From positions 143,617 to 207,616 of the IMG/VR virus record IMGVR_UViG_3300046171_000252: DNA of 64,000 bases; one strand, given 5' to 3'. The translations under genes and the position numbers were made by a program. Under the pieces are notes generated by a model. It saw nothing but the letters and a program-made list of their open reading frames with translations, ran no database searches and was not told where the DNA came from. This document shows positions 17,346 to 39,960 of this stretch, in pieces. Position 1 is the first letter of the stretch; every line of letters begins with the position of its first letter.

Positions 17346-17356
17346 TATTGTCATGG

Positions 17357-18670: not shown

Positions 18671-18684
18671 GTAAAGACCTTCAG

Positions 18685-18711
18685 GGAGAGTTGCATAAAC
18701 TCTCCTTTTTT
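18685..18711 (+). terminator. intrinsic terminator overlapping next promoter
   Basis: GGAGAGTT-GCATA-AACTCTCC + T6; TTGCAT-N17-TATAAT at 18691-18719. Confidence 0.75.
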
Positions 18712-18748
18712 GGTATAATCTAAATATACGGACTAACAATATTTAAAT

Positions 18749-19770
18749 ATGAAAAGAGCATTGATTACTGGTGGTGCGGGGTTCATCGCACACCATTTGA
18801 TTTCCCAAATTTTAAAGAATACTGACTGGGAAGTTGTGACTCTTGATCGTCTTGATTTTAGTGGCAATCTGAACCGCCTTCAGGATGTTCTCCAAGAGTT
18901 TTCTCCAGAAGATCGCTCTCGTGTGAGAGTTGTATTTCATGATTTGAAAGCAGCAGTCAATCCACTTATTGCTGCCGATATTGGTAGAGTGGATTATATT
19001 CTGCATCTTGCTGCTGGTTCTCATGTCGATCGTAGTATTGATTATCCCATGGAATTTGTCATGGATAATGTTGTGGAACTTGCAACATCCTTGACTATGC
19101 TCGTGGTCTTGACCACATTGAGAGGTTTGTATACTTCAGCACTGATGAAGTATTTGGTCCTGCTCCTAATGGAATCAACTATGGTGAGTATGATAGGTAC
19201 AATTCTACCAACCCATATAGTGCAGCTAAGGCAGGTGGAGAAGAACTGGCAGTAGCATTTGAGAATACTTACGGACTTCCTGTATACATTACTCACACGA
19301 TGAATGTATTCGGTCAGCGTCAGCATCCAGAAAAGTTCATTCCGATGTGTATCAAGCGTGTTCGTGATGGTGAAGCAATCACCATTCATAGTGATGAGAC
19401 CAAAACAATTCCTGGTTCTCGTCATTATATTCATGCGGAGGATGTTTCTGATGCTCTGCTCTTCCTTCTGGCACAAGACACTGTGGTTGAAAATGGAAAC
19501 TATGGTGGTGCCAAGTGTCCTAAATTCAACATTGTTGGTGCCGAGGAACTAAACAACCTGCAACTGGCACAGATCATTGCAGATGTTCAGGGTAAAGAAC
19601 TCAAGTATGATATGGTTGATTTCCATTCCACACGTCCGGGACATGATCTTCGCTATGCACTTTCGGGTGAAAAAATGCGTAAGATGGGATGGGAACCAGA
19701 AAACATTCGTGATCGTATTCGTGAAGTTGTTGAGTGGACACTTGCCAATGAGCGTTGGATCAAACTATAA
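18749..19770 (+). CDS. rfbB: dTDP-glucose 4,6-dehydratase-like SDR (apparent -1 frameshift near 19074)
   Basis: GGAGFIA, AAGSHVDRS; shifted frame gives STDEVFG, YSAAK, RPGHDLRY. Confidence 0.85.
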
Positions 19771-19795
19771 TAGATAAAGGAGGTTTATTACTAAC

Positions 19796-20839
19796 ATGTC
19801 TGAATATACAAAGACGGCACTAGTTCTTGGTGCTGGTGGTTTTATCGGAAGTCACATGGTTAAGCAACTTCGTTCCGAAGGATACTGGGTTCGTGGTGTT
19901 GATTTAAAGCGTCCTGAGTTCTCTGACACGGAAGCAAATGAATTCATTCAAGGTGACTTGCGTGATAGAAGTTTTGTTCGCCGTTGCATTCGTACCACTG
20001 GCGTTAATGGTGGGTTCTATGCACAGATCGTAGATAAGTTTCTTTCACCTTTTGATGAGATTTATCAGTTTGCTGCTGATATGGGTGGTGCAGGTTTCGT
20101 ATTCACTGGTGAGAATGATGCAGACATCATGCACAATTCTGTGTCTATCAATCTGAATGTTCTTGAGGAACAACATCTACTTAATTTGGATAAGGATGTA
20201 AATAAAACTAAAATTTTCTATTCTGGTTCAGCATGTATGTATCCAGAACACAATCAACTAGACCCCGATAACCCCGACTGCCGTGAAGAATCAGCATATC
20301 CAGCAAACCCTGATTCGGAATATGGGTGGGAGAAATTATTTTCTGAGAGATTATACTTTGCTTATAATCGCAATCATGGTATTCCTGTCAGGGTGGCACG
20401 TTACCACAATATTTTTGGTCCCGAAGGAACCTGGGACGGTGGAAGGGAGAAGGCACCAGCTGCAATCTGCCGTAAAGTTGCTTACCTCCCGGAGTCAGGT
20501 GGAGCAATCGAGGTGTGGGGAGATGGCCTACAAACTCGTTCCTTCCTGTTCGTTGACGAATGCGTTGAAGCAACTAGAAGACTGATGGACAGTGACTTTA
20601 TGGGTCCTGTGAATATTGGTTCCGAAGAGATGGTTACTATTAACCAACTTGTAGATACTGCTGCTAAGGTTGCTGACAAGGAAGTCACCAAGATTCATAT
20701 TGATGGACCTCTGGGAGTTCGTGGACGCAACTCTAATAATGATGTGATCCGTAAGGAACTTGGGTGGGACTATTCTCAAACTCTTGAGGAGGGTATTCGT
20801 AAGACTTATAATTGGATTCAGGAACAAATTCAAAAATGA
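19796..20839 (+). CDS. GDP-mannose 3,5-epimerase-like SDR
   Basis: GAGGFIG, AADMGGAGF, YGWEK, GREKAPAAICRKV. Confidence 0.85.
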   Translation: MSEYTKTALVLGAGGFIGSHMVKQLRSEGYWVRGVDLKRPEFSDTEANEFIQGDLRDRSFVRRCIRTTGVNGGFYAQIVDKFLSPFDEIYQFAADMGGAGFVFTGENDADIMHNSVSINLNVLEEQHLLNLDKDVNKTKIFYSGSACMYPEHNQLDPDNPDCREESAYPANPDSEYGWEKLFSERLYFAYNRNHGIPVRVARYHNIFGPEGTWDGGREKAPAAICRKVAYLPESGGAIEVWGDGLQTRSFLFVDECVEATRRLMDSDFMGPVNIGSEEMVTINQLVDTAAKVADKEVTKIHIDGPLGVRGRNSNNDVIRKELGWDYSQTLEEGIRKTYNWIQEQIQK

Positions 20840-21903
20840 TTAAAATTTATACTTATTCTCACAATAGACCCGACCTAATCAAACCTCAATACGAAAGTCT
20901 TAAAAGACATATTAAAGATGACTTTGAATTTATCGTATTCAATAATGAACGGGCAGGATCTAATCCATTTAGTGGATACTCACCTGATAGAGTTCAGGAG
21001 ATTTTTGATGTTTGTAATGAGATTGGTATAGAATGTATCAGAGTTGACCTAGACCCTCAGTATCAGTTCATTAATGGATACAAACAATTTGAAGGTGATT
21101 CATTTACTGGTGATGGAAGTCAAGTTTGTGGGTATGCATTCACATGGGGATGGCAACATTACATCTCCAAGAATGATTGTATCTCTTTGATAATTGATTC
21201 TGATATGTTCTTCATCAAAGACATATCAATTGCAGAAATGATTGAAGGATACAACCTGTCTATCATTCCATCCTATAGATATAGTAGAAAATATAGTGAT
21301 GGTGATCCTGGAGAGATTGCTTTGAAGTATCCTTGGAATGGTATTGTCATTGCTGATATTCCTAATCTTCCCAATCCTTCTGAACTTAAATGGGATCTTG
21401 GAATATTCAACGGACAACCATGTGATGTTGGTGGAGGAGGACATAAGTATCTTTCTGATTATGAGAATGAATTAAAAATTAAATACATGGATCAGGTAAG
21501 CGTTCAAAGGGATGCTGACTCTGGGGATAAGCATAGTCCTCCTCCTGGATATATTGAAATGGGATTTAATGGATGCTCTCCAATGCATGTCAATCTTGTA
21601 GAGAAAGAGTTTCACATTCTTGATTACCAACATTCCGATACTCAAACTTTTCCTCATCAAAAGGAAAGAGAGAACTACTGGCAGTATGTTTATGATTGCT
21701 TTACTTACATGGTTGACTATGGAAGTTATTATCAGTTTCCCAAACCAACATTTATTGACTTGATAAAATTTGAGGAAGATGATAGTATGGAGGATGCATT
21801 CGTTCTACATTATAAAAATGCAAGCAATGGAAATGCTTGGCAATCTGATGATTATAATGCATTGAAAACAAGATCACTCAATAGAGTTTTAGGTGTAAAT
21901 TAA
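20836..21903 (+). CDS. putative glycosyltransferase (GT-A fold)
   Basis: IIDSDMFF DxD motif; island context. Confidence 0.5.
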   Translation: MIKIYTYSHNRPDLIKPQYESLKRHIKDDFEFIVFNNERAGSNPFSGYSPDRVQEIFDVCNEIGIECIRVDLDPQYQFINGYKQFEGDSFTGDGSQVCGYAFTWGWQHYISKNDCISLIIDSDMFFIKDISIAEMIEGYNLSIIPSYRYSRKYSDGDPGEIALKYPWNGIVIADIPNLPNPSELKWDLGIFNGQPCDVGGGGHKYLSDYENELKIKYMDQVSVQRDADSGDKHSPPPGYIEMGFNGCSPMHVNLVEKEFHILDYQHSDTQTFPHQKERENYWQYVYDCFTYMVDYGSYYQFPKPTFIDLIKFEEDDSMEDAFVLHYKNASNGNAWQSDDYNALKTRSLNRVLGVN

Positions 21904-22761
21904 ATGAATATTGCTATTTTAGGATCTGCTGGACAGATCGGTGCTTATCTAGAAGAGTATCTAAAAGAGAAAGGGCACGATGTTATTGGTGTTGATATAG
22001 TTGAAGGTCCACAGAATGATCTTCGTGTAACACCAAACACTTATGTTGAAAGTATTATTAAGAATGCAGACTTTGTATTCTTTCTATCTTTTGATGTGGG
22101 TGGTTCTCGCTATTTGAAAAAGTATCAACATACTTTTCAGTTCATTAATAACAATACTCGTATGATGGCAAATACTTTTGCCTTACTTGAGAAGTATCGG
22201 AAGAGGTTTGTGTTCGCATCATCTCAGATGAGTAACATGACTTATTCACCTTATGGTGTCATGAAGCGTGTTGGTGAACTTCATACCACAGCATTGAACG
22301 GATTGATTGTTAAGTTCTGGAATGTGTATGGTATTGAAAAAGATATGGAGAAGGCTCATGTGATTACTGACTTCATCCGTAAGGGATTCGAAGAAGGAGA
22401 ATTTGAAATGATGACTGACGGCACAGAAGAGCGTCAGTTCCTGTATGCCGAGGACTGCTGTGAGGCACTGGAAACTGTAATGGAAAACTTTACAGATTTC
22501 AAACCAGAAGACCCACTTCACATTACATCATTCCACTCTAATACTGTTAGAGAGATTGCTAATATTATCCAGGGTTGTTTTGGATTAATTGATAAGTATG
22601 ATGTAAAGATCAACTCTGGACTTGCTAAAGACAGTGTTCAGATGGATAAAAGAAATGAGGCAGACAATTATATTTTAAACTGGTGGGTTCCCAAGACTAC
22701 TATTGATGTGGGCATCAGAAAAGTATTCAACGAAATGAAGAAGGACTATGAGAATATTTGA
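21904..22761 (+). CDS. NAD-dependent epimerase/dehydratase
   Basis: GSAGQIG, FASS, YGVMK, RQFLYAEDC. Confidence 0.85.
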   Translation: MNIAILGSAGQIGAYLEEYLKEKGHDVIGVDIVEGPQNDLRVTPNTYVESIIKNADFVFFLSFDVGGSRYLKKYQHTFQFINNNTRMMANTFALLEKYRKRFVFASSQMSNMTYSPYGVMKRVGELHTTALNGLIVKFWNVYGIEKDMEKAHVITDFIRKGFEEGEFEMMTDGTEERQFLYAEDCCEALETVMENFTDFKPEDPLHITSFHSNTVREIANIIQGCFGLIDKYDVKINSGLAKDSVQMDKRNEADNYILNWWVPKTTIDVGIRKVFNEMKKDYENI

Positions 22762-23524
22762 TTGTTTTATTTTCAATCATGAGGTAGAACTCTTAGAAAT
22801 AAGAATGAATATCTTAAATGATTATGTTGATAAGTTTGTTATTACTGAAGGTAATATGACTTTCTCTGGACTACCCAAAGAGAGTCATTTTTTGAATAAC
22901 AAAGATAGATTTGCCAAGTGGGAAGATAAGATTATCTTAAATCAGATTGAATTACCAGATCTTGAAGGTCCATGGCACAGAGAAATCTATTCACGAAATG
23001 CTATGGTAAGACCTGACATTTTTAATGATGATGATCTGATTTTGATGAGTGATGGTGATGAGATTCCTAATCCCGAAATCTTAGAACATGCATCCGAGTG
23101 GGTCTCTGATGATACTCACTTCACATTTGAACAGTCTTGCTATGCATATTGGATAAACAATCTATACTCCAATAAGTGGTTTGGTAGTAGAGCAGCTACT
23201 TATAAACACATCAAAAATACTACAGTTGATGATATACGAGAAGGAACAGAGGATGAAAATAAGATATCTGGATCTATTATAACTAATGGTGGATGGCACT
23301 TTACGTATTTGGGTAATGAGGAACACATCCGACAGAAGATAAATTCATTCTGTGATAGACAATTTGATATTCCGGAAGTAACAGAGAACATCTCTAAGAA
23401 TCTGGAAAGCGGTCAGGATGTTCTTAACAGGTCTCATATCTCTTATCAAAGAGTAGAACTTGATGAGTCATTCCCGCAACATATTATTGACAACCAAGAA
23501 AAATATTCGCACTTAATTAAATGA
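22748..23524 (+). CDS. glycosyltransferase family 17-like
   Basis: FDCFIFNHEVELLEIR, SDGDEIP, GWHFTY. Confidence 0.85.
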   Translation: MRIFDCFIFNHEVELLEIRMNILNDYVDKFVITEGNMTFSGLPKESHFLNNKDRFAKWEDKIILNQIELPDLEGPWHREIYSRNAMVRPDIFNDDDLILMSDGDEIPNPEILEHASEWVSDDTHFTFEQSCYAYWINNLYSNKWFGSRAATYKHIKNTTVDDIREGTEDENKISGSIITNGGWHFTYLGNEEHIRQKINSFCDRQFDIPEVTENISKNLESGQDVLNRSHISYQRVELDESFPQHIIDNQEKYSHLIK

Positions 23525-24564
23525 TTGTTTCTGAAATTTATAATGGTTCTGGTCTTGGAAACCAGTTGTGGAATATCGTAGCACCACGATGTATTGCCGA
23601 GCATCGTGGATTTAGATGGGGTGTGCGAAGAGACACTAATAATAGTGCTCAGGGTAGTAGTAAAGTTCCTTCGGTTGGATTGAAAACATTTAAAGGATGT
23701 CAGTTCCTACCAGACATTGATTTTGGTGATGAAGTAATCGGTGGTGTCACCACTGTTGAAGGTCAAGAACCAGATGTTCTTCCTGATGGTATTGAATATT
23801 ATGCCAGAGAAAGAGTTGATGAATATCCTTTAGGTCTTCATGCTCTGTCTGGCGAAGATGCTATGATTTATGATGAACTTCTTTATAATACGATTCCTGA
23901 TAATACTAAGGTTGATGGAACATTTCAGAGACTGAGATATATTAATGATCGTCGTGATGACATTATTCAGTGGTTGAAACCTAGTATTACAGTCACAGAA
24001 TATAGTAGTGATGATTTTTGTGTAATTCAGTTCAGGGGTGGTGAGTATCTTATCACCTCTGCCTGGTGCCCTCCTGAGTATTACAGAATGGCAGCAGATA
24101 GAATGTTGGAGATTAATCCTAACATGAAGTTTGGCGTGATTACAGACGACCCAGAGAATGCACGAAAGTTTATTCCTTGGGCTCCGATTATCGGTTCCTC
24201 TGCAACCAGTGAAGTTGATCCACTTGCTCATCTACAGGGTTCGGGATTCTATGAATACAAGGGTGGTCCAATCGGTATTGATTATTCCATTCTTAATAAT
24301 GCAGTCAACTCTATTATTACTTCATCCACCTTTGCTTTTTGGCCAGCATGGACTAATACTAAAGCAGAGATTATCATTGCTCCTAAGTATTGGAATGATT
24401 ACAAACGTTCTGATGGATACTGGAGAGGCGATGATAACATTGTAGATGACTGGGATTATATTGATATGAAAGGTGCTATGATGAGTGGTGTGGATTGTAA
24501 GGAAGAGTATAGGAAGTATAGAAAAAAACATGCTTTCTATTTTAATAAACCCGAAGTTGTGTAA
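23521..24564 (+). CDS. GT11-like (alpha-1,2-fucosyltransferase-like)
   Basis: GLGNQL, IQFRGGEY, STFAFWPAW. Confidence 0.75.
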   Translation: MIVSEIYNGSGLGNQLWNIVAPRCIAEHRGFRWGVRRDTNNSAQGSSKVPSVGLKTFKGCQFLPDIDFGDEVIGGVTTVEGQEPDVLPDGIEYYARERVDEYPLGLHALSGEDAMIYDELLYNTIPDNTKVDGTFQRLRYINDRRDDIIQWLKPSITVTEYSSDDFCVIQFRGGEYLITSAWCPPEYYRMAADRMLEINPNMKFGVITDDPENARKFIPWAPIIGSSATSEVDPLAHLQGSGFYEYKGGPIGIDYSILNNAVNSIITSSTFAFWPAWTNTKAEIIIAPKYWNDYKRSDGYWRGDDNIVDDWDYIDMKGAMMSGVDCKEEYRKYRKKHAFYFNKPEVV

Positions 24565-25244
24565 TGTTTAATACTGATAATATTCAGTCTGGTAATGACC
24601 CTTTTGACTATTGGATTCTTGATAACTTTTTAGATATTGAGGATGCAAAACAACTTAGTAAAGAATTCATTGACTATGATAGTCCTGCAGAGGACATCGT
24701 TCATTATCAAGGATGGATTGCCGAGAAGAAGACATGTAATAAGTGGGATAGATTTCCACCTTTAACTTACAAGGTCTTTACTAATTTACTGGCATCTAAT
24801 TTTATTTCTACACTTTCTGACATCACCGGAGTTAATCCTTTGTATCCTGACATTGGATTGCACGGTGGGGGTTGGCATATGCATGGAAAGGGTGGTAGAC
24901 TATCAGTTCACTTAGACTATTCTATTCATCCAAAATTGAACTTGCAGAGAAAACTAAATCTTATTCTATATCTTGAAGAAGATTATGATCCTGCATGGGG
25001 TGGCAGTCTTCAGTTCTGGTCTCATGACGAGAAGACGAAAAAACCAAAGGATAAGATAAGAGAAGTAGAACCAATCTTTAATAGAGCAGTTCTATTTGAC
25101 ACAACTCAAAACTCATGGCATGGATTTCCAGAACCAATCCATCCACCTGCAGGTAAGATGAGAAAAAGTTTCGCAGTATATTACATGACTGACATCACAC
25201 AAACTGCAGAAGAAAGATACAGAGCACATTATGTTGGAGTATAA
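24564..25244 (+). CDS. 2OG-Fe(II) oxygenase
   Basis: HLD, LNLILYL, FNRAVLF, WHG, R-x-S. Confidence 0.88.
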   Translation: MFNTDNIQSGNDPFDYWILDNFLDIEDAKQLSKEFIDYDSPAEDIVHYQGWIAEKKTCNKWDRFPPLTYKVFTNLLASNFISTLSDITGVNPLYPDIGLHGGGWHMHGKGGRLSVHLDYSIHPKLNLQRKLNLILYLEEDYDPAWGGSLQFWSHDEKTKKPKDKIREVEPIFNRAVLFDTTQNSWHGFPEPIHPPAGKMRKSFAVYYMTDITQTAEERYRAHYVGV

Positions 25245-26012
25245 ATGCTAGACCTAAGAAAAGTTACTTTATTTGCAATCTATGTTCCTTGGGACAAATC
25301 AAATATTTCTGCTGAAGATTTTCAGGATGGTGAACAAGAAAAATCAATTGACAACGGACTTCGGGATACAATCAAAGCAATCTATACATGCATGGAGAGC
25401 GCAAAGTTTGGTGCTGTTCGGTTAATAACATCAAAAGAAGTTATTAATGAATATGCTGGCAAACTCTCCTCAGATGGAATCAGCGTTGAACTACCGAATA
25501 TTCCCATATGTAATATGAAAGATTATGCCAGATACATGATCTATCATCTAACAGAACATGTGGATACTAAATTTGTTTTAACAATTCAACATGATGGGTT
25601 TATTCTAAATCCAAGTGCATGGAGAGATGACTTCTTTGATTATGATTACGTTGGTGCTCCATGGCCATGGCGAGAGCAAGGATTTGTGACTCCTTTCGGG
25701 GAGCACATTGCTGTTGGTAATGGTGGTTTCTCACTGAGAAGTAAGAAACTTTTAGATGTTCCTGGTAAGGTTGATGTTCCTTTTGATGTTGTTGCCATGA
25801 ATGACTTCTATAAGATGTTTGGTGGGGTCAATTGGAATGAGGATGGAAACATCTGTGTGCATAATAGGCACATTTTTGAAGAGCAGGGATGTAAGTTTGC
25901 ACCTGTGGAGGTTGCAAAAGACTTCTCCCATGAAAGTCCATTAGATGTTAATCGCGGTATTATACCCTTTGGATATCATGGCAATTTGCCTGCAGGCGTA
26001 GTAATTAATTAA
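25245..26012 (+). CDS. DUF5672-like putative glycosyltransferase
   Basis: IQHDGFI, YDYVGAPW, VGNGGFSLRS, NED. Confidence 0.8.
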   Translation: MLDLRKVTLFAIYVPWDKSNISAEDFQDGEQEKSIDNGLRDTIKAIYTCMESAKFGAVRLITSKEVINEYAGKLSSDGISVELPNIPICNMKDYARYMIYHLTEHVDTKFVLTIQHDGFILNPSAWRDDFFDYDYVGAPWPWREQGFVTPFGEHIAVGNGGFSLRSKKLLDVPGKVDVPFDVVAMNDFYKMFGGVNWNEDGNICVHNRHIFEEQGCKFAPVEVAKDFSHESPLDVNRGIIPFGYHGNLPAGVVIN

Positions 26013-26021
26013 GGAGTTCAA

Positions 26022-32347: not shown

Positions 32348-33281
32348 TTGTCCATTAAGAATTTCCCTGTTCGGAGGTTCTACTGATAATCCATATTTCG
32401 TAGAGAAGTATGGGTATGGTTCTGTAATTAGTTTCACATGTGATCTTAAGACATATGTAACTATCAGTCAGGACAAAATTGGTTTCAATAAAGAACAACA
32501 CAAATATATCATCAACTATTCAAAGAGAGAGGAAGTCTCCAAGGTTGAGGATATACAGAATGAAGTTGTAAGAACTGTATTGGAGCATTTTAATATGCCA
32601 CCAGTACAGGTTACTCTTACCAGTGATGCTTATTCACAAGGAAGTGGATTGGCATCTTCGTCTTCTTATACAATAAGTCTTATCAAGGCATGTTCTTTGT
32701 TCTTGAAGATTACAATGACAGAAAGTGAGATATGTAAATTGGCATATCAACTTGAAAGAGTATATAATCCTTATTGTGGATATCAAGATCCGTATGGATG
32801 TGGTGTCGGTGGATTTAAAAGAATTGAATTCATGAATAATGATTGTATCAAGTATGAGTTTCTTCCAACAGAACTATTTGATAAGTATGATACTCATCTT
32901 ATCTTCACAGGTGTCACGAGAAACTCTAAGAAGATTCTTAAAAATGTAACTGATAATTTGGAGAAAGTAAAACCACTTCTTGACACAGTAGTCTGTGCAT
33001 ATCAAAGTCTTTCTCAAAATGACTATGAGTTGTTTTTCAAGTATCTAAATCATGGATGGCAACAAAAGAAAGAAACGAGTAGTTCAATATGTGAGAATGA
33101 ACTCATTAAAGAGATTGATTCTTCTTTGGAAAATAGTCCATCGGTCTTGTCGCATAAATTATGTGGGGCAGGTAATGGAGGATTTTTCTTAGTATTCTCT
33201 AATAAGGACAGCTTGAATATTCCTTATGAATCTGTTAGAATAAATGTATCGCCAAATGGGGTAACGGGTAGATGTCTTTGA
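32334..33281 (+). CDS. hddA: GHMP sugar kinase, HddA-like heptose-7-phosphate kinase
   Basis: PLRISLFGGSTD, GSGLASSS, GYQD, KLCGAGNGGF. Confidence 0.8.
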   Translation: MLIASCPLRISLFGGSTDNPYFVEKYGYGSVISFTCDLKTYVTISQDKIGFNKEQHKYIINYSKREEVSKVEDIQNEVVRTVLEHFNMPPVQVTLTSDAYSQGSGLASSSSYTISLIKACSLFLKITMTESEICKLAYQLERVYNPYCGYQDPYGCGVGGFKRIEFMNNDCIKYEFLPTELFDKYDTHLIFTGVTRNSKKILKNVTDNLEKVKPLLDTVVCAYQSLSQNDYELFFKYLNHGWQQKKETSSSICENELIKEIDSSLENSPSVLSHKLCGAGNGGFFLVFSNKDSLNIPYESVRINVSPNGVTGRCL

Positions 33282-34078
33282 TTACGTTAGAAACTGAAAA
33301 TCCTGTTGCGATTGATTCTCCCGATCATATTGCACCAGCAGGAACGATTGTAGATAATCGCACGAATGTTGATTATGTAAATGCAGTAAAGAATTACTTT
33401 GATAGACCATTCAAAGTATTGGATATGGGATGTGCTGGAGCACAGATGATTGCAGATTATATTGATGCTGGATATGTTGCCGTAGGACTTGAGGGTTCTA
33501 CGCATGTTCTTACGGGTGCAGGGTCTCACAACTGGGACAAGTATCATAATAAGAATCTATTCAATGTAGATTTGTCAAAACCATTTCAACTGAAAGAAGA
33601 TGGTGGGGACATGAAGTTTGACTTTATCCATAGTTGGGATGTTGTTGAGCATATTCATCCTGATGATCTGGGTGTCTGGTTTGATAATGTTAAGAATCAC
33701 CTGACAGATGATGGTGTGTTCTGTTGTGTTCTTGCAACTACTCCTGATTATGAAATGAAAGATGGTGAACTTGTAATTCGTCATCGGTCAATGTTCAACT
33801 CTGCGGAGTGGGTCAACATCTTCTTTGATAATGGATTTGAACTCTGCGTTGAGAATAATTGGCACTCTTATCCTGTGGGTAGAAACTATCCCGACAGTGT
33901 AAAACCACAATGCTATCATGAAGCAGCAGGTGTAGTCGGAACAGAAAATGGATTATACTTTGGTTATCTCTTTGGTGATGCTCAGTTCAGCAACCATGAC
34001 AACAAAGGTGCAAACATTTATTTCTGTGTAAGAAAAAAACAAAACCACGAACAGCGTATTCCATCTAACTGGGACTGA
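33272..34078 (+). CDS. class I SAM-dependent methyltransferase (paralog of 30765)
   Basis: LDMGCAGA, FDFIHSWDVVEHI; shared DSPDHI and NWDKYHNKNLF. Confidence 0.85.
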   Translation: MSLITLETENPVAIDSPDHIAPAGTIVDNRTNVDYVNAVKNYFDRPFKVLDMGCAGAQMIADYIDAGYVAVGLEGSTHVLTGAGSHNWDKYHNKNLFNVDLSKPFQLKEDGGDMKFDFIHSWDVVEHIHPDDLGVWFDNVKNHLTDDGVFCCVLATTPDYEMKDGELVIRHRSMFNSAEWVNIFFDNGFELCVENNWHSYPVGRNYPDSVKPQCYHEAAGVVGTENGLYFGYLFGDAQFSNHDNKGANIYFCVRKKQNHEQRIPSNWD

Positions 34079-34081
34079 ATT

Positions 34082-34585
34082 ATGAATCCATTTAAAGAGT
34101 ATATTGAAGTTCTTGAATGTGCCCACATGGGCAATGAGTTTGAGAAGTTTCAAGAAGCATTCAAAAATCACAGCAGAATTATCATCCTTGGCAACGGAGG
34201 TAGCAGTTCAGTTGCATCTCATATCTCTCAGGACTATATGAAGTTCAGGGGTAAGAAAGTTTCGATTCTTTCTGACCCATCCATGTTGACCATGCTTACA
34301 AATGATTTTGGGTATGAAAATGCATATCAAAAGTTTCTAGAGTATTATGTGGAGGATGAAACTCTTGTTGTTCTGATGAGTTCTGGTGGAGAATCAAAGA
34401 ATATTTTGAATTGTTTAACCTGGTGTGAAGAAAACAAGGTCAACTATGGTATTCTGACGGGGTTCTCTCCTGAAAATACTATTAGAACTAGGGCAACCAA
34501 TGCCCTTTGGAATTACTATATCTCTAGTCAAGACTATGGTGTGGTAGAATGTGTTCATCAGATTTTCCTGCACGGAGTCGTATGA
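34082..34585 (+). CDS. gmhA: phosphoheptose isomerase (SIS domain)
   Basis: GNGGSSS.ASH, TMLTNDFGY, SSGGESKNI, VECVH. Confidence 0.85.
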   Translation: MNPFKEYIEVLECAHMGNEFEKFQEAFKNHSRIIILGNGGSSSVASHISQDYMKFRGKKVSILSDPSMLTMLTNDFGYENAYQKFLEYYVEDETLVVLMSSGGESKNILNCLTWCEENKVNYGILTGFSPENTIRTRATNALWNYYISSQDYGVVECVHQIFLHGVV

Positions 34586-35334
34586 GATATTGCTTTGATA
34601 TTGATGGCACACTTTGCCATACTCCTTGCAATCCAGATGGACATGGTATGAGGTATGAAGAAGCAACTTCATTTCCATGGATGGTTGGTCATGTTAATCG
34701 TCTTTATGATGAAGGACATTACATTATTATGATGACTGCTCGTGGAAGAGGGTCTGGAATTGATCATGGTGATTTGACTCGCAATCAACTTGCAATGTGG
34801 GGATACAAGTATCATGAACTTGAACCTATGTTTCATAAACCAACTGCGGACCTTTTTATTGATGATAAGGGTATTGATGTAAATGAGTGGTTAAAACAAC
34901 AACCACAAACTAAAGGTGTTATTGCCGGTGCATTTGATGTTATTCATCCTGGATACATTAGAATGTTTTCTGAAGCAAAACAATACTGTAATCATTTAAC
35001 TGTTGCTCTTCATGTTGACCCATCCACCGAAAGGTCTCATAAACTTTCACCGGTCCAATCTGCCGATGAGCGTAAAGAGATTCTTCTGGGAATGAAGAAC
35101 ATTGATGATGTTGTTCTTTATAATAATGAGGAAGAATATCTGTCCTATCTCAAGAGTGGTGATTATGAGATTCGTTTTCTTGGCACAGACTATAAGGATG
35201 GAACATATTCAGGTAAAGAAATAGACATTGATATTGTTTGGTTGGATAGAGAAAATCATAATTACTCTACTACAAAACTAAAAACAGATATTTTTAAATC
35301 AATTTTACCAAGGGCATCTGAGAACTATGATTAA
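34582..35334 (+). CDS. HAD phosphatase fused to cytidylyltransferase-like nucleotidyltransferase
   Basis: N-terminal FDIDGT...KP..D..IDD; C-terminal GAFDVIHPGY (HIGH-type) and STT. Confidence 0.85.
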   Translation: MRYCFDIDGTLCHTPCNPDGHGMRYEEATSFPWMVGHVNRLYDEGHYIIMMTARGRGSGIDHGDLTRNQLAMWGYKYHELEPMFHKPTADLFIDDKGIDVNEWLKQQPQTKGVIAGAFDVIHPGYIRMFSEAKQYCNHLTVALHVDPSTERSHKLSPVQSADERKEILLGMKNIDDVVLYNNEEEYLSYLKSGDYEIRFLGTDYKDGTYSGKEIDIDIVWLDRENHNYSTTKLKTDIFKSILPRASENYD

Positions 35335-36223
35335 AAGTTTAGTAACTGGAGGAGCAGGATTCATCGGATCTAATCTGGTGGATGCATTACTTGAACAAGG
35401 ACACATGGTCGTATGTGTTGATAATGAAAGTGCAAGTAATGAAGAGTTCTATTGGAATAGAGATGCTATTAACATTAAGGCAGATGTAACTGATTATAAA
35501 ATAATGAGAAACTGCATGACAGACATTGATTATGTTTTTCATCTAGCAGCAGAGTCGCGTCTTCAACCTGCAATTGAGAATCCAATTGAAGCTATTGTAA
35601 AGAACTGCGTTGGAACTACAACTATTCTGCAGTGTGCCAGAGAAGCAGGTGTAAAGAAAGTTATGTATTCTTCCACTTCTTCTGGATATGGAATGAACTC
35701 ATATCCGAATGTTGAAACACAACCAGATGATTGTTTGAATCCTTACTCTGCATCTAAGGTTGCAGCAGAAAAATTCTGTAAGATGTATACAGATCTATAT
35801 GGACTTAAGACTGTTGTATTCAGATACTTTAATGTATATGGAGAAAGGTCTCCTGTCTTTGGTCAGTATGCTCCTGTCATTGGAATCTTCCTGAAGCAAA
35901 AGAACGAAGGTCAACCTCTTACTATTGTGGGTGATGGGTCTCAAAGGAGAGACTTTATTCATGTGAAAGATGTTGCTGCCGCAAATATTCTTGCCGCAAC
36001 TGCTGATATTCCTGAGGAGTATTATGGTCAGGTGTTTAATATTGGTAGTAGTGACAGCATTTCTATTCAGGAGATTGCAAATCTAATTTCAGATGATCAG
36101 GTTTATATTCCGAAGAGAGAAGGTGAAATGGAGACTACTTTTGCTAATATAGATAAGGCAAAAGAAATTCTTGGTTGGACTCCCAAGATTAATGTTTCGG
36201 ATTGGATTCGTGAAAACCTATGA
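35327..36223 (+). CDS. NAD-dependent epimerase/dehydratase
   Basis: TGGAGFIGS, YSASK, RYFNVYG, RDFIHV. Confidence 0.92.
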   Translation: MIKSLVTGGAGFIGSNLVDALLEQGHMVVCVDNESASNEEFYWNRDAINIKADVTDYKIMRNCMTDIDYVFHLAAESRLQPAIENPIEAIVKNCVGTTTILQCAREAGVKKVMYSSTSSGYGMNSYPNVETQPDDCLNPYSASKVAAEKFCKMYTDLYGLKTVVFRYFNVYGERSPVFGQYAPVIGIFLKQKNEGQPLTIVGDGSQRRDFIHVKDVAAANILAATADIPEEYYGQVFNIGSSDSISIQEIANLISDDQVYIPKREGEMETTFANIDKAKEILGWTPKINVSDWIRENL

Positions 36224-37131
36224 GCAAGTTTGTAGTATTGAAGTCTGCGGGACTGGGTAATAGAATTAAGTTATATGTGTCTTACCTGCAGAGGTATGAC
36301 GAACTTTTGATTGAAAAGGAACCTGACTTATATCTCTTTGAGAATTTCAAGTTATGTAATAAGGAAGAGGATATCAAAATCTATCCTTGGACTCATTCTG
36401 GATGGAGACTTCTAGTTAATGAAGATGAGGTTCAATACTGCGACAAATACAAAACTATAGATCAACTCTATAATGATACTCCACAATACTTTATTGATAA
36501 GTATCTTCCTGTATGGCAGAAGTTAAGAATTCAACCAGACATTCAAAAGATTATTGACGACTTTACGCAGGACTGGGACAAGGAAGATATGGTTGGAATC
36601 CATGTTAGAACTAATCTGCCACCAGTTGATGACGGAAGTCGTAGTGTCTGGATGGACTATGAAGGATTTGAGAAAGAGATTGAGAAGTATCCATCTACTC
36701 AGAAGTTTTTCCTTGCCACAGACCATGAACCAATAGTCGGATATTACAAGTCTAGATATCCTGGACAGATTATTACATTCCCTAGGAACGATATTGTTAG
36801 GCACGACAATCATACTGATAATGTGAGTCAGACAATCGGTGCATTTCTTGATATGTATTTGTTGTCTCAATGCTATAAGAAGTTGATTCTTACATGGGGA
36901 ACTTCTTTCTCGGAATGTTCCTGGTGGTTTGGTGGATGTAGAGCTGAAGTGGTGATGCCAACACTTTGGGACAAAATTCCAACAGACTTTTACGATATCA
37001 TTTACAATAAGAAGAATGTGTCCTATAATCTAGGAGGAGAATCAGTCTTTGCTGAGGGTTGTCGCACGTATGCTCCTCTCAGTTTCGGAAATAACTACAC
37101 TATCAAAAATTGGATGGTCCATCATGAATAG
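36220..37131 (+). CDS. fucosyltransferase-like (paralog of 29995)
   Basis: GLGNRIK, GIHVR, FLATD; shared WRL.V...YKTID..Y..TPQYF.DKYL. Confidence 0.65.
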   Translation: MSKFVVLKSAGLGNRIKLYVSYLQRYDELLIEKEPDLYLFENFKLCNKEEDIKIYPWTHSGWRLLVNEDEVQYCDKYKTIDQLYNDTPQYFIDKYLPVWQKLRIQPDIQKIIDDFTQDWDKEDMVGIHVRTNLPPVDDGSRSVWMDYEGFEKEIEKYPSTQKFFLATDHEPIVGYYKSRYPGQIITFPRNDIVRHDNHTDNVSQTIGAFLDMYLLSQCYKKLILTWGTSFSECSWWFGGCRAEVVMPTLWDKIPTDFYDIIYNKKNVSYNLGGESVFAEGCRTYAPLSFGNNYTIKNWMVHHE

Positions 37132-37879
37132 GATAGAAGACTACAACAAATTAAAAATAGGTATTGTAACCTGGATTAAAGATTATGTTGAAAAGAATGA
37201 GATTAAATCCCTTGTTATAGGAGTATCTGGAGGAATTGATTCTGCAGTAGTCTCTACCTTATGTGCAGAAACAGGACTACCAACCTATGTGGTTGCCATG
37301 CCTCTGCATTCTAAAATTGAAAATAGTACATTATCAAGTGATCATTGTAAATTTTTGCAAGAGAGATACGCCAACATCAGGCATAACCGAGTAGAACTGT
37401 CGGGTGTTTATGATCAGTTCATGCACAGTTTAACTTGGTGGACTGGTGATAAATTTAATGGCAATGAACTCTCCAATGCAAATACAAAGTCTCGTCTTCG
37501 TATGGTGACTCTGTATCAAATTGCCGGATCTGTTGGTGGCATCGTTGTCGGCACCGGTAATAAGGTTGAAGATTATGGTGTAGGATTCTACACTAAATAT
37601 GGTGATGGCGGTGTTGATATAGCACCCATCGCAGACTTATACAAAACTGAAGTATGGGAACTTGGAAAGCATCTTAATATAGATAAACGAATTATAGATG
37701 CAAAACCAACGGATGGTCTGTGGAATGATGGACGAACTGATGAAGATCAAATTGGTGCATCCTATGAGGACTTAGAACATGCCATGGAATATGGTAATGG
37801 TCCTGCCGTAAGAATCTTGCATGATTATAACTGCAAGAACAAGCATAAGATGAACCCTATTCCGACTTTTAAATTATGA
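37124..37879 (+). CDS. nadE: NH3-dependent NAD+ synthetase
   Basis: SGGIDS, N.KSRLRM, GTGNKVE, GFYTKYGDG, PTDGL, DEDQIG; no glutaminase domain. Confidence 0.93.
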   Translation: MNRIEDYNKLKIGIVTWIKDYVEKNEIKSLVIGVSGGIDSAVVSTLCAETGLPTYVVAMPLHSKIENSTLSSDHCKFLQERYANIRHNRVELSGVYDQFMHSLTWWTGDKFNGNELSNANTKSRLRMVTLYQIAGSVGGIVVGTGNKVEDYGVGFYTKYGDGGVDIAPIADLYKTEVWELGKHLNIDKRIIDAKPTDGLWNDGRTDEDQIGASYEDLEHAMEYGNGPAVRILHDYNCKNKHKMNPIPTFKL

Positions 37880-38988
37880 AAATTGGACTTATTGGTGCAG
37901 GAAGACTTGGTATCTGTCTTGCTCTCTTGATTGAAAGAGCAGGATATGATGTCTTAGTGTCTGATATCAGAGAAGACTACGTTTCTAATCTGAATAAAAA
38001 GAGAATTAATACCAATGAACCGGGGGTCGGATGGTATCTCAAACAAACTGAAAGATTTGAAGCAACCACCGACAATCAACGTGTCATCAATGAGTGTGAT
38101 ATTATAATTTGTCTTGTTGCAACTCCTTCTCTTGATGATGGTTCTTATGATGTAAGTTCTGTCTGGAAAGTTGTTGAAGACTTCAAGAGTTCATCTGCAA
38201 AACTAAGTGGTAAAACTTTTATAGTTGGTTGCACGACAAATCCAGGTGACTGCGAACAATTTGCAGAACAATTAGATTCCTTTGGTATTGATGTTTTCTA
38301 TAATCCAGAGTTTATTGCTCAGGGTTCTGTCATCAAAGATTTGCAGAATGCAGACATGGTTCTGATTGGTGGTGAAGGTAAGTATCTTGAAGAGATTAAA
38401 CAGATCTACTTTAAGATTCAAGTCAGTGCACCAAAAATTTATACGATGAGCACTACTGCTGCCGAACTTGTAAAGTTGGCAGTCAATTGTTATTTGACTA
38501 CTAAGATTTCATATGCCAATATGGTGGGCGAGGTCATGTCTCTGTCCGGAATGGGAGATGAAATAGAAGATGTTTTATCTGCTATTGGTGCTGATAGTCG
38601 TGTCGGGTCTAAGTATCTTAAGTTTGGATATGGGTATGGTGGTCCTTGTCTTCCTAGGGACAATCGTGCCTTTGCTGCTCATGCTAAAAAACTTGGATTG
38701 GAATATAATCTTGGGTCAACCACAGATAAATTTAATACCGAACACAATAAGTTTTTGGTTGACTGGGTAGTTCGCAATAATGAAAAAGAACTTCCTTTTG
38801 CTTTTTCATATGTTTCATACAAAGAAGGAACCGATATTGTAGAAGAAAGTCAACAATATCGTCTATGTCTTGAATTATTAAATCTTGGTTATAAAGTTTA
38901 TGTTGTGGATGATCTTGTAGAATCCCAATGTGATGATAGAATTATTTGGGGAATCCCTTCTGAAGAAGTATTTTGGATTGAATTATGA
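37876..38988 (+). CDS. ugd: UDP-glucose/GDP-mannose dehydrogenase family
   Basis: GAGRLG, YNPEF, AELVKLAVN, GYGGPCLPRD. Confidence 0.88.
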   Translation: MKIGLIGAGRLGICLALLIERAGYDVLVSDIREDYVSNLNKKRINTNEPGVGWYLKQTERFEATTDNQRVINECDIIICLVATPSLDDGSYDVSSVWKVVEDFKSSSAKLSGKTFIVGCTTNPGDCEQFAEQLDSFGIDVFYNPEFIAQGSVIKDLQNADMVLIGGEGKYLEEIKQIYFKIQVSAPKIYTMSTTAAELVKLAVNCYLTTKISYANMVGEVMSLSGMGDEIEDVLSAIGADSRVGSKYLKFGYGYGGPCLPRDNRAFAAHAKKLGLEYNLGSTTDKFNTEHNKFLVDWVVRNNEKELPFAFSYVSYKEGTDIVEESQQYRLCLELLNLGYKVYVVDDLVESQCDDRIIWGIPSEEVFWIEL

Positions 38989-39787
38989 ATGATATCGGAG
39001 ACAAAAATAAAGCAATACATAAACTCAAAGGACTTCCTCACATCTACTGCATCAATCTAGATGACAAGGTAGATAGATGGGAATCAATGGAGTCTCAGTT
39101 TAAGTATTGGGAGATTGAAAATTATACTCGTGTGTCTGCTTATGATGGTCGTGAGGATGATCTTGGTTCAATGTTGAAGGGACGTTATCCTGATAATATG
39201 TCTTCTGGCGAGGTGGGGTGTGTTACATCTCATCTCAAAGCACTCAAAGAATTTTTGGATTCTGATGAAAAATGTGCTCTTATTATGGAAGATGATTGTG
39301 ATATCAATACTGTTAGTTACTGGCCTTTTTCTTGGAAGAACTTCTTTTGCAAAGTTCCTTATGATTATGATGTAGTTCAACTTGCAATCATTAATCCTGC
39401 ACAGGTTAATGTAAAAATGCATAGAAGGTTTGTCAATGATTTTTCTACAGGCATGTTATTTAATTAATCGTCGGTATGCTCAGAAGTTGCTTGATCTTCA
39501 TACCAGAGGCGATAAATACAAACTTGACAATGGAGTTAAACCTCGTGCTGTTGCCGATGATTTGATTTACAATTCTGGTAATACTTTTGCCATTCCACTC
39601 TTTCTTTATAAGATAGAGTTGGGTTCAGACATTCATGATGCTCATGTTGATGTATTTCATAAAAGCAGTTATGAAGGGTCTATGGAACTTCTGGAAAAAT
39701 GATGCATCATCTATTGAGGACTGGGATGGTCTGTTTGACTATGACCCATACTTTGGAACACTTCCTCCTGGATGGGAGGGCAAATGA
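38985..39787 (+). CDS. glycosyltransferase family 25 (apparent +1 errors near 39451 and 39677)
   Basis: INLDDKVDR, GEVGCVTSH, MEDD; STACYLI continues in shifted frame. Confidence 0.8.
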
Positions 39788-39960
39788 TGAATGATGATAG
39801 TGTAAATGATCTATGGGAAGATATGGCACGACTCAATATGCTTTATGAAGAGTTGTGCTGGGATCACGATGATGTCCTTGAATTTGTTCCTGACTATAAT
39901 GAGGACGTAATTGTCATCCGGAACAAAAGCAGGAAAAAATCATCCAGGCACAGGGGTTGA
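39784..39960 (+). CDS. hypothetical protein
   Basis: MMNDDSVNDLWEDMARLNMLYEELCW; ATGA overlap. Confidence 0.6.
   Translation: MMNDDSVNDLWEDMARLNMLYEELCWDHDDVLEFVPDYNEDVIVIRNKSRKKSSRHRG

What the first reader, a model, noticed from the sequence alone, without database searches (positions are those of the whole stretch)
18749..39787. 21-kb, ~23-gene self-contained glycan synthesis island
Tightly coupled genes cover donor synthesis (RfbB-like, GME-like, two more SDRs, Ugd, heptose enzymes), about 12 transferases (GT2, GT7-like, GT11 x3, GT17, GT25, GT92-like, NodZ-like x2, DUF5672) and tailoring (3 methyltransferases, 2OG oxygenase). No flippase, polymerase or lipid-carrier initiator is visible, which argues for a cytoplasmic acceptor (virion proteins, DNA) or remodelling of host LPS precursors. 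LPS-type islands are known in cyanomyoviruses, but their product is not established.
Basis: partly seen in the sequence, partly recalled or inferred. Interest (0 to 1): 0.75.

Follow-up and report, generated by a model that had tools for sequence, protein, structure and literature searches.

The report
Cyanophage glycan-synthesis gene island
A virus of marine cyanobacteria carries a 21-kb block of about 25 working genes that make activated sugars and join them into a complex sugar chain; such "LPS islands" are already known in these viruses, and what the chain is attached to is still unknown.

Summary
Window 18749-39787 holds 27 same-strand ORFs (25 genes), with no gap over 25 nt. It lies in a 207.6-kb T4-like cyanomyovirus genome from a metagenome, between the tRNA/small-ORF flank and psbA. 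Three corrections apply. A NadE gene was overlooked. The first gene (RmlB-like) and the last (GT25) are frame-broken here, probably by assembly error. The island is not self-contained, because only heptose has a full activation pathway.

The island belongs to a large, globally distributed family (61 IMG/VR contigs, TARA contigs, several isolates). This family shares a backbone of heptose cassette, SDR and GT25. Twenty genes tested have dN/dS of 0.007-0.27, so it is not stuffer DNA.

No initiator, flippase, polymerase or polytopic membrane protein occurs in this genome or in 1 Mb of related islands. The homologous Prochlorococcus cassette, by contrast, sits beside a phosphoglycosyltransferase and multi-TM proteins. 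A conserved sigma-70-type promoter and the absence of late-promoter motifs suggest early transcription.

My best reading (0.45) is remodelling of a host lipid-anchored envelope glycan at the cytoplasmic face. Virion glycosylation (0.3) is not excluded. DNA modification is unlikely. This is a new member of a known kind.

The parts
18683..18707 (+). Terminator-like hairpin ending the upstream unit. Its loop carries the -35 element of the island promoter.
   Evidence: 10-bp stem followed by a T run. The same hairpin, with compensatory stem changes, precedes the islands of S-SM2, a TARA contig and RN05-S.
18691..18719 (+). Sigma-70-type promoter-like site: TTGCAT, 17 nt, TGgTATAAT (extended -10), 30 nt before the first ATG.
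   Evidence: Read from the sequence. Conserved as TTGTCA-17-TATAAT in S-SM2, TTGACA-17-TATAAT in TARA L106 and TTGACA-17-TACAAT in RN05-S. Function is inferred.
18749..19770 (+). RmlB/RfbB-like NDP-hexose 4,6-dehydratase. It is split into two ORFs by a 1-nt deletion after 19073; the downstream frame is open to 19770.
19796..20839 (+). GDP-mannose 3,5-epimerase-like SDR. The predicted product is GDP-L-galactose or GDP-L-gulose.
   Evidence: E 3.8e-85 to 2c59.
20836..21903 (+). Protein of unknown family, probably a GT-A fold glycosyltransferase.
   Evidence: No Pfam, NCBIfam or PHROG hit. The nearest atlas clusters are giant-virus proteins whose models resemble GT2, GT8 and GT92. Eleven related loci carry a homologue of about 50% identity.
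21904..22761 (+). Short SDR (285 aa), a candidate 4-keto reductase or epimerase.
22748..23524 (+). GT17-family glycosyltransferase.
   Evidence: E 5e-30.
23521..24564 (+). Distant GT11-like transferase (347 aa).
   Evidence: paralogy to the GT11 genes.
24564..25244 (+). 2OG-Fe(II) oxygenase with a prolyl-hydroxylase-like fold. The HxD...H triad is present. Its substrate is unknown.
   Evidence: It sits at the same position in TARA contigs.
25245..26012 (+). DUF5672 protein. In other phage proteins this domain is fused to GT9, GT2 or methyltransferase domains.
26022..26810 (+). Probable methyltransferase.
   Evidence: phrog_6608, E 9e-16.
26807..27607 (+). GT11 (alpha-1,2-fucosyltransferase family).
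   Evidence: E 2.7e-30.
27604..28311 (+). GT2 glycosyltransferase.
28308..29141 (+). GT92 / GT2_4-like glycosyltransferase.
29138..30004 (+). GT11, a paralogue (39.5% identity) of the gene at 26807.
29995..30768 (+). Fucosyltransferase-superfamily enzyme (GT23/NodZ-like), a paralogue of the gene at 36220.
30765..31523 (+). SAM-dependent methyltransferase.
31511..32347 (+). GT-A transferase, Glyco_transf_7C-like (phrog_15655). It is part of the conserved backbone.
32334..33281 (+). GHMP kinase, HddA-like heptose-7-phosphate kinase.
   Evidence: E 2.9e-30. There are 61 IMG/VR loci with homologues.
33272..34078 (+). SAM-dependent methyltransferase, a paralogue (41% identity) of the gene at 30765.
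34082..34585 (+). GmhA-like sedoheptulose-7-phosphate isomerase.
34549..35334 (+). Fusion of a HAD phosphatase (DxDGT motif) and a cytidylyltransferase-like nucleotidyltransferase (GAFDxIHPGY, YSTT motifs). This is the candidate GmhB plus NDP-heptose synthase.
   Evidence: The motifs are conserved in 64 homologues.
35327..36223 (+). GalE/WbpP-like SDR that always follows the heptose cassette.
36220..37131 (+). Fucosyltransferase-superfamily enzyme (GT23/NodZ-like). Its low-confidence C-terminal tail overlaps the NadE start.
37049..37879 (+). NadE-type NAD+ synthase, the only copy in the genome. It travels with Ugd in related islands.
   Evidence: (TIGR00552 178.6 bits against a cut-off of 63.65).
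37876..38988 (+). Nucleotide-sugar 6-dehydrogenase (Ugd-like).
   Evidence: TIGR03026 225.6 bits against a cut-off of 189.8.
38985..39787 (+). GT25 glycosyltransferase, the conserved right-hand end of the island. It is broken here by two 1-nt insertions at about 39449 and 39674.
   Evidence: Homologues occur in 99 cyanophage records.

Best explanation
Proposed role. The island is an early-expressed auxiliary module that makes unusual sugar donors and uses about 14 soluble transferases and 3 methyltransferases. These build a complex, partly methylated oligosaccharide on a host lipid-anchored envelope acceptor at the cytoplasmic face of the inner membrane. The acceptor would be either lipid A-core (LOS-type extension) or a host-initiated polyprenyl-linked glycan.

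Donors. The predicted donors are an NDP-heptose made from sedoheptulose-7-phosphate, GDP-L-galactose or GDP-L-gulose made from GDP-mannose, a 6-deoxyhexose, and UDP-glucuronic acid.

Export and benefit. The host's own housekeeping export machinery would carry the product to the surface. This would change the infected cell's coat, for example to stop further phage adsorption.

Shown. Gene content and family assignments, purifying selection, the conserved backbone, the family-wide lack of membrane components, the host orthologues beside a phosphoglycosyltransferase, and the conserved promoter-like site.

Inferred. The identity of the donors, early timing, the acceptor, and the benefit to the phage.
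For: Host orthologues. The four-gene heptose cassette (kinase, GmhA, HAD/NT, SDR) has about 60% identical orthologues, in the same order, in Prochlorococcus chromosomes. There it lies beside a Bac_transf phosphoglycosyltransferase, GT2 and GT4. In one genome 8-TM proteins also lie nearby. These are lipid-linked surface-polysaccharide loci.

Location and promoter. The island lies in the auxiliary-gene region between the tRNAs and psbA, not in the virion module. A sigma-70-type promoter embedded in a terminator hairpin is conserved upstream of four divergent islands. The island has only one NATAAATA late-promoter motif, inside a gene (motif from PMC2984593), and no strong internal terminator.

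LOS-like content. Loci that extend LOS/LPS core likewise consist only of soluble transferases, GT25 among them (my own knowledge). That matches the absence of initiator, flippase and polymerase.

Functional genes. All 20 genes tested are under purifying selection.

Present in RNA libraries. The island is found in RNA libraries about as well as the nrd/primase genes.

Receptor context. Host surface glycans are thought to govern cyanophage adsorption, and the field's standing hypothesis is surface alteration.
Against: - No experiment ties any cyanophage island to a host envelope change.
- The LPS of the two marine Synechococcus strains studied contains no heptose (PMC4515613). The genome also has no GT9 core heptosyltransferase. 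A canonical LPS inner-core role is therefore excluded.
- Known phage serotype-conversion modules use membrane proteins; this island has none.
- Phages of this kind do encode polytopic membrane proteins (psbA and psbD lie next door). The consistent lack of any export gene in 1 Mb of islands is therefore also what a cytoplasmic acceptor would predict.
- The close host version of the cassette is rare (5 of 401 genomes). Most hosts would have no matched exporter.
- The promoter is a sequence inference only.
Confidence: 0.45

Rival explanations
1. Virion glycosylation. The soluble enzymes would build the glycan directly on phage structural proteins in the cytoplasm, as giant viruses and some mycobacteriophages do. 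Released particles would then carry a phage-specified sugar coat.
For: - All island proteins are predicted to be soluble.
- No membrane step occurs in this genome or in 1 Mb of related islands, whereas the host loci have them.
- About 14 different transferases plus methyltransferases suggest a complex non-repeating glycan.
- The unknown transferase is nearest to giant-virus protein clusters.
- The 2OG oxygenase has a prolyl-hydroxylase fold nearest OGFOD1/Tpa1. Dictyostelium PhyA, whose hydroxyproline is then glycosylated in the cytoplasm, is also among the matches.
- Virion glycosylation has a precedent in phages (Freeman 2023, cited).
Against: - The island is not in or next to the structural module and has no late-promoter motif upstream.
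- The conserved promoter is of the early, host-sigma type.
- No collagen-like or other obvious acceptor repeats occur in the genome.
- The oxygenase fold equally matches PolD/PasI, which act on high-carbon sugar nucleosides.
- The library search found no report of glycosylated cyanophage virions.
- The heptose cassette's host orthologues serve lipid-linked loci.
Confidence: 0.3
2. DNA hypermodification. The transferases would decorate modified bases in phage DNA to evade restriction, as in T-even phages.
For: T4-like ancestry. All enzymes are soluble. This idea has been suggested for another cyanophage (PMC12801897).
Against: - No thymidylate-synthase/dCMP-hydroxymethylase family was found in the genome, and the controls rang.
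- No TET/JBP or T4 alpha/beta-glucosyltransferase family was found, though those searches had no positive control.
- The island proteins themselves match glycan-building families and small-molecule methyltransferases, not DNA-modifying ones.
- About 14 transferases, and heptose and uronic-acid donors, have no precedent on DNA.
Confidence: 0.03
3. Inert cargo. The island would be 'stuffer DNA' or decaying host DNA with no function for the phage.
For: This was raised as a possibility in PMC3037559. Two island genes are frame-broken in this assembly.
Against: - dN/dS is 0.007-0.27 for 20 genes against two collinear relatives.
- Catalytic motifs are conserved.
- Synteny is kept in contigs from many oceans and years.
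- GC content is phage-like.
- The frameshifts fall in the most conserved genes. Nine further indels (eight of 1 nt, one of 2 nt) sit in the adjacent psbA/psbD, which are intact in the near relative. This pattern points to assembly error.
Confidence: 0.01

Closest known systems
'LPS' gene clusters of cyanomyoviruses P-SSM2, S-SSM7 and S-SM2 (Sullivan et al. 2005, 2010), and the cell-wall gene sets of S-SCSM1 and S-SCSM2R
   Same: The genome type is the same. The position is the same, in the variable region near the tRNAs, hli and psbA. The mix is the same: sugar-nucleotide enzymes, many soluble transferases and methyltransferases. The RmlB-like first gene is orthologous (75% nt identity to S-SM2, T4-GC 265). 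Heptose isomerase, nucleotidyltransferase and epimerase genes and a terminal GT25 are shared.
   Different: Most of the cargo differs; only about 10% of the island matches any isolate at the DNA level. The heptose kinase here is of the GHMP type. Among cyanophage isolates that type is found only in SynMITS9220M01. NadE sits inside this island.
LOS / LPS outer-core extension loci of Neisseria and Haemophilus (lgt, lpsA; GT25)
   Same: These loci hold only soluble or peripheral transferases, GT25 among them. They have no initiator, flippase or polymerase in the locus. The product is a non-repeating oligosaccharide exported by housekeeping MsbA/Lpt (my own knowledge).
   Different: The acceptor is not known here. 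There is no GT9 heptosyltransferase. The marine Synechococcus LPS studied lacks heptose and Kdo. The families GT17, GT92, GT23-like and DUF5672 are not typical of LOS loci.
Prochlorococcus surface-polysaccharide loci carrying the same heptose cassette
   Same: The kinase, GmhA, HAD/NT and SDR genes are about 60% identical and in the same order.
   Different: The host loci include a phosphoglycosyltransferase, GT4 and multi-TM proteins. The phage islands never do.
Virus-encoded virion glycosylation (chlorovirus and mimivirus machinery; mycobacteriophage glycosylation operons)
   Same: These are autonomous sets of soluble transferases, donor-synthesis enzymes and methyltransferases with no membrane steps. 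One island protein is nearest to giant-virus clusters.
   Different: No glycosylated virion protein is known for cyanophages. The island is not linked to the structural genes. The promoter is of the early type.
Serotype-converting phage modules (GtrABC, Oac, Wzy or its inhibitors)
   Same: The proposed benefit is the same: altering the host surface to block further adsorption.
   Different: Those modules are small and made of membrane proteins that act in the periplasm, and they belong to temperate phages. This is a 21-kb set of soluble enzymes in a lytic-type phage.
NDP-heptose biosynthetic enzymes found across kingdoms, viruses included (Tang et al. 2024, as summarised in PMC11461863)
   Same: The same steps are present: isomerase, kinase, nucleotidyltransferase and (here) a phosphatase, starting from sedoheptulose-7-phosphate.
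   Different: The kinase is GHMP/HddA-like, not PfkB. A HAD phosphatase is fused to the nucleotidyltransferase, whereas the phosphatase was reported absent from viruses. The HxGH motif reads HPGY. The nucleotide and the anomer are unknown.

Membership tests
Cyanomyovirus 'LPS' gene cluster | Lies in the variable region of a T4-like cyanophage genome near the tRNAs and psbA/hli. | tested here: met
   The flanks match primase, nrdA and nrdB of S-SKS1, S-SM2 and Bellamy. tRNAs lie at 14924-17428 and psbA at 40154.
Cyanomyovirus 'LPS' gene cluster | Carries the co-occurring genes named in 2010: RmlB-like epimerase, heptose isomerase, kinase, nucleotidyltransferase and epimerase. | tested here: met
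   The functions are all present. The RmlB-like gene is orthologous to SSM2_191. The kinase is of a different (GHMP) type from that of most isolates.
Wzx/Wzy- or ABC-transporter-dependent O-antigen/capsule locus | Initiating phosphoglycosyltransferase (Bac_transf or WecA type). | tested here: not met
   PF02397 and PF00953 are absent from the genome, and the controls rang. No homologue of the host PGT occurs in 63 phage loci.
Wzx/Wzy- or ABC-transporter-dependent O-antigen/capsule locus | Flippase, polymerase/ligase or another polytopic export protein. | tested here: not met
   PF01943 and PF04932 are absent. No ORF in the genome has 9 or more predicted TM segments. No island protein has a credible TM helix.
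LOS / LPS-core extension locus | Soluble transferases only, GT25 among them, with no dedicated export genes. | tested here: met
LOS / LPS-core extension locus | GT9 heptosyltransferase and a lipid A-core acceptor that contains heptose. | tested here: not met
   PF01075 is absent. The marine Synechococcus LPS studied lacks heptose and Kdo. The acceptor itself cannot be tested here.
Serotype-conversion module (GtrABC / Oac / Wzy) | Membrane-embedded modifying enzymes. | tested here: not met
T-even type DNA glucosylation | Hydroxymethyl-pyrimidine synthesis (thymidylate-synthase-like hydroxymethylase). | tested here: not met
   PF00303 is absent, and the controls rang.
T-even type DNA glucosylation | T4 alpha- or beta-glucosyltransferase family. 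| tested here: inconclusive
   PF09198 and PF11440 were not found, but nothing rang in the controls. The island proteins scanned directly against Pfam gave no such hit.
Phage virion-glycosylation operon (mycobacteriophage type) | Transferase genes embedded in or next to the virion structural operon. | tested here: not met
   The island lies between the tRNA region and psbA. The tail-fibre-size genes start about 9 kb downstream.
Phage virion-glycosylation operon (mycobacteriophage type) | Glycan covalently bound to capsid or tail proteins. | not testable with these tools
   Needs mass spectrometry of virions.
NDP-heptose biosynthesis pathway | GmhA isomerase, heptose-phosphate kinase, phosphatase and nucleotidyltransferase. 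| tested here: met
   GmhA E 9e-14, HddA E 2.9e-30, RfaE domain II E 1.2e-14. The HAD DxDGT motif is present. All scores lie below the equivalog cut-offs, so the exact product is open.
NDP-heptose biosynthesis pathway | Canonical HxGH nucleotidyltransferase motif. | tested here: inconclusive
   The motif reads HPGY. It is invariant in 64 phage and host homologues.
GDP-mannose 3,5-epimerase | Full-length similarity to characterised GME. | tested here: met
   E 3.8e-85, residues 9-347 against 2c59. Activity was not tested.
Fucosyltransferase superfamily (GT11/23/37/65/68) | Conserved motifs and a GT-B-like fold nearest alpha-1,6-fucosyltransferases. | tested here: met
   Invariant GxxNRIK, HIR(S/T), SD and LLSxC...TFxExxWW motifs. 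Foldseek finds FUT8/NodZ at E 5e-9 and probability 1.0, but TM is only 0.44-0.56.
NadE NAD+ synthase | Score above the curated family threshold. | tested here: met
   TIGR00552 scores 178.6 bits against a cut-off of 63.65. The stricter NF010587 model scores 189.6 bits, below its cut-off of 255.

The most novel reading that the evidence does not exclude
Cyanomyoviruses of this widespread group would glycosylate their own virions in the cytoplasm with a phage-specified glycan containing heptose, L-galactose, uronic acid and methylated sugars, possibly on hydroxylated residues made by the island's prolyl-hydroxylase-like oxygenase. That would be a giant-virus-style autonomous glycosylation system in an abundant marine phage. 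A smaller side reading is that the NadE-like enzyme, which travels with Ugd in 9 of 10 islands, amidates the uronic acid rather than making NAD.
Probability: 0.3. Interest if true: 0.8.

Novelty: new member of a known kind. Interest (0 to 1): 0.45.

Why it matters
These islands take up about a tenth of the genome in an abundant group of ocean viruses, and their purpose has been an open question since 2005. This case adds several things.
- The genes are under strong purifying selection, so they are not filler.
- The family has a fixed backbone of a heptose-activation cassette, an SDR and GT25.
- The cassette is shared with rare Prochlorococcus surface-polysaccharide loci, which keep the membrane steps that the phages always lack.
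- A host-type promoter is conserved in front of the island.

Together these turn a vague 'LPS genes' label into two sharp, testable alternatives, cell coat versus virion coat. A cultured system with the same cassette (SynMITS9220M01) is available to test them. Either answer bears on how marine phages compete for hosts and on what sugars infected cells release.

Tried and rejected
1. Collagen-like (Gly-X-Y) acceptor proteins, to go with the prolyl-hydroxylase-like oxygenase and GT25. The genome has none; the only hit is a Gly/Ser/Asn-rich stretch.
2. T4-type DNA glucosylation. No hydroxymethylase family was found. No TET/JBP or T4 glucosyltransferase family was found either, though those searches had no positive control.
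3. Read mapping, to decide whether the frameshifts are real.
4. Pattern scans across the RmlB frameshift. IMG/VR gave nothing. The metagenome scan gave one divergent intact gene carrying the extra T, which confirms the motif but is not a near relative.
5. A second NadE copy near nrdB, as in S-SKS1 and Bellamy. There is none; the island copy is the only one.
6. GT25 in the Prochlorococcus genomes that hold the cassette. It was not found with this query, and those genomes are incomplete.
7. Sequence search of the NodZ-like protein against solved structures. Nothing was found, so a structure prediction was needed.
8. Using the oxygenase fold to decide between a protein and a sugar substrate. It is ambiguous, because both kinds of enzyme are among the best matches.
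9. RNA-library word shares as a test of expression. The island and the nrd region score alike, which fits transcription but cannot exclude DNA carry-over.
It was re-run without that row.

Full report
WHAT IS THERE

The window is the last 64 kb of a 207,616-bp single-contig virus record, rated complete by CheckV. Its flanks match primase, nrdA, nrdB and tRNA regions of T4-like cyanomyoviruses; S-SKS1 is the nearest at about 82%.

From 18749 to 39787, 27 plus-strand ORFs resolve into 25 genes. Nineteen of the 24 junctions overlap, two abut, and the largest gap is 25 nt. GC is 36-39% with a strong positive GC skew, like the rest of the phage.

ARE THE LABELS RIGHT?

- The first gene is an RmlB-like 4,6-dehydratase.
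- The second is a close relative of GDP-mannose 3,5-epimerase (E 3.8e-85).
- The two 'NodZ-like' genes share the conserved fucosyltransferase motifs. Their predicted fold is nearest FUT8 and NodZ.
- The 'GT7-like' gene has neighbours that carry Glyco_transf_7C.
- The only unlabelled gene looks like another GT-A enzyme with giant-virus relatives.

It is the only copy in the genome. In related islands it travels with Ugd in 9 of 10 cases.

BROKEN GENES

The RmlB-like gene has one missing base after 19073, judged against S-SM2. The rest of its frame is open and keeps the YxxxK motif. GT25 has two extra bases.

Immediately downstream, psbA has a +2 and a +1 indel, and psbD has five +1 insertions. 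The near relative L003 has all three genes intact. The 19 kb in between has no breaks.

The breaks sit in the genes most conserved among co-occurring phages. I therefore read them as assembly errors of a metagenome contig.

NOT SELF-CONTAINED

Only heptose has a full route from a central metabolite: GmhA, an HddA-like GHMP kinase, and a HAD phosphatase fused to a cytidylyltransferase-like enzyme. The genome has no hexose-1-phosphate nucleotidyltransferase. GDP-mannose, UDP-glucose and dTDP-glucose must come from the host.

THE FAMILY

Searching IMG/VR with the kinase gave 61 loci. A tblastn matrix shows a constant backbone: the GT7C-like transferase, the kinase, GmhA, the HAD/NT fusion, the GalE-like SDR and, at the right end, GT25. 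Variable cargo surrounds this backbone.
- L003 (about 90-97% amino-acid identity) and L004 (about 80%) are collinear with the window from 22748 to the end.
- A further lineage keeps most of the same gene set at about 50% identity.
- TARA Oceans and other contigs show the same order around the oxygenase.
- Near-identical DNA is present in marine metagenomes from 2014 to 2025.

All 20 genes tested have dN/dS between 0.007 and 0.27 against both L003 and L004. This answers the 2010 question of whether such clusters are 'stuffer DNA': they are maintained as working genes.

Among isolates, GT25 occurs in 99 cyanophage records. The GHMP kinase occurs only in SynMITS9220M01 among cyanophage isolates.

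THE MISSING MEMBRANE STEPS

- The genome has no Bac_transf, WecA-type, Wzx or Wzy/WaaL family. The controls rang in all four searches.
- No ORF has 9 or more hydrophobic segments.
- No island protein has a credible TM helix.
- In 1.0 Mb of 63 related phage loci there is no homologue of the host phosphoglycosyltransferase. No ORF with 4 or more TM segments occurs either, apart from psbD and three short ORFs that look spurious.

THE HOST COUNTERPART

The same four-gene cassette, about 60% identical and in the same order, lies in Prochlorococcus chromosomes among ilvC, clpP and cobD. There it sits beside GT2, GT4 and a Bac_transf phosphoglycosyltransferase. In one genome it lies within a larger locus with 8-TM proteins and a large PGT.

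Only 5 of 401 sampled genomes of that family have the close copy. In cells, then, the cassette feeds a lipid-linked surface polysaccharide. The phages have kept the soluble chemistry and dropped the membrane parts.

TRANSCRIPTION SIGNALS

A terminator hairpin (18683-18707) is followed by a T run and TGgTATAAT, with TTGCAT in the hairpin loop 17 nt upstream. The same arrangement precedes the first island gene in S-SM2 (TTGTCA), a TARA contig (TTGACA) and RN05-S (TTGACA). The stem shows compensatory changes.

The cyanophage late motif NATAAATA occurs once in 21 kb, and inside a gene. No strong terminator occurs until after psbA. I infer one long early or middle transcript made by host polymerase.

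RNA libraries hold the island about as well as they hold the nrd/primase region. The shares are 0.37, 0.29 and 0.19 against 0.43, 0.22 and 0.18. This fits transcription but does not exclude DNA carry-over.

WHAT IT MOST LIKELY DOES

I rank first (0.45) the remodelling of a host lipid-anchored envelope glycan at the cytoplasmic face, exported by host housekeeping machinery. The reasons are:
- the host context of the cassette;
- the position among auxiliary genes;
- the early-type promoter;
- the fact that LOS-type core extension needs exactly this kind of gene set, soluble transferases including GT25 and nothing else.

Several things count against it. The two marine Synechococcus LPS structures studied lack heptose and Kdo. 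There is no GT9 heptosyltransferase. Known serotype-converting phage modules are membrane proteins. These phages do encode polytopic proteins next door, yet never an exporter.

Virion glycosylation (0.3) explains that last point well, and it has precedents in giant viruses and mycobacteriophages. But the island is not linked to the structural genes, no acceptor repeats were found, and no report of glycosylated cyanophage particles turned up.

The oxygenase does not decide the matter. Its fold matches protein prolyl hydroxylases (OGFOD1, Tpa1, PHD2, PhyA) and also PolD/PasI, which act on high-carbon sugar nucleosides.

DNA modification is unlikely.

COMPARISON WITH WHAT IS KNOWN

This is a member of the 'LPS gene cluster' class described for P-SSM2, S-SSM7 and S-SM2. 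Related gene sets were discussed recently for S-SCSM2R, where 13 transferases were called possibly the highest number in a marine phage. This island has about 14.

It is not an O-antigen/capsule locus, not a serotype-conversion module and not a T4-type DNA-glucosylation system by their defining features. It works most like either a LOS extension locus or a viral glycosylation machinery.

VERDICT

The island is a new member of a known kind. Interest is moderate: the product remains an open and now sharply testable question.

Noticed in passing
window 40154-41239 (psbA) and 41592-42658 (psbD): Both photosystem genes are frame-disrupted. psbA has a +2 indel at about 40291 and a +1 at about 40894, which creates an in-frame stop at 40568-70. 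psbD has five single-base insertions between 41949 and 42159. The near relative L003 has both genes intact. This is probably assembly error in a region shared by many co-occurring phages.
   Followed up: partly
window 40022-40117: A PhotoRC-II RNA motif (Rfam RF01717, 77.5 bits) lies just upstream of psbA. It is preceded by a TTGACA-17-TATTAT promoter-like site and a TATAAATA late motif at 39957-39990.
   Followed up: no
window 18634-18668; L001 13842-13925; L106 3203-3285: A conserved small hairpin element (GTTTCTTGCTT...AAGAGCAAGTGGCG) occurs in one or two copies just upstream of the island's terminator/promoter in three divergent phages. Its function is unknown.
   Followed up: no
window 37049-38988 and loci L003, L004, L012, L015, L017, L020, L021, L026, L053: NadE and Ugd occur together, usually adjacent, in 9 of the 10 related islands that carry NadE. 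They could form a functional pair, either for NAD supply to the dehydrogenase or for amidation of the uronic acid.
   Followed up: partly
window 34549-35334 and 63 homologues: The nucleotidyltransferase half of the HAD fusion has HPGY in place of the usual HxGH motif. This is invariant in all phage and host homologues.
   Followed up: partly
window 25245-26012: In other, mostly phage, proteins the DUF5672 domain is fused to GT9 heptosyltransferase, GT2 or methyltransferase domains. That fits a role in heptose-containing glycans.
   Followed up: no
window 36220-37131 / 37049-37879: The last 37 residues or so of the NodZ-like protein are absent from its paralogue and from the ~50%-identity lineage. 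They are modelled with very low confidence and overlap the NadE start by 83 nt. The true ends of the two genes are uncertain.
   Followed up: no
L066, L067, L070; G038:C1:663869-670413; G247:C2:101020-139564: A few Prochlorococcus genomes (5 of 401 sampled in the family) carry the phage-like heptose cassette inside chromosomal surface-polysaccharide loci. This shows gene sharing between host islands and phage islands; the direction of transfer is unknown.
   Followed up: partly
window 14924-17428 and 47139-47391: There are two tRNA clusters, with seven tRNAs in all. The Arg-Asn-Gly-Val cluster lies left of the island, as in S-SM2 and RN05-S.
   Followed up: no
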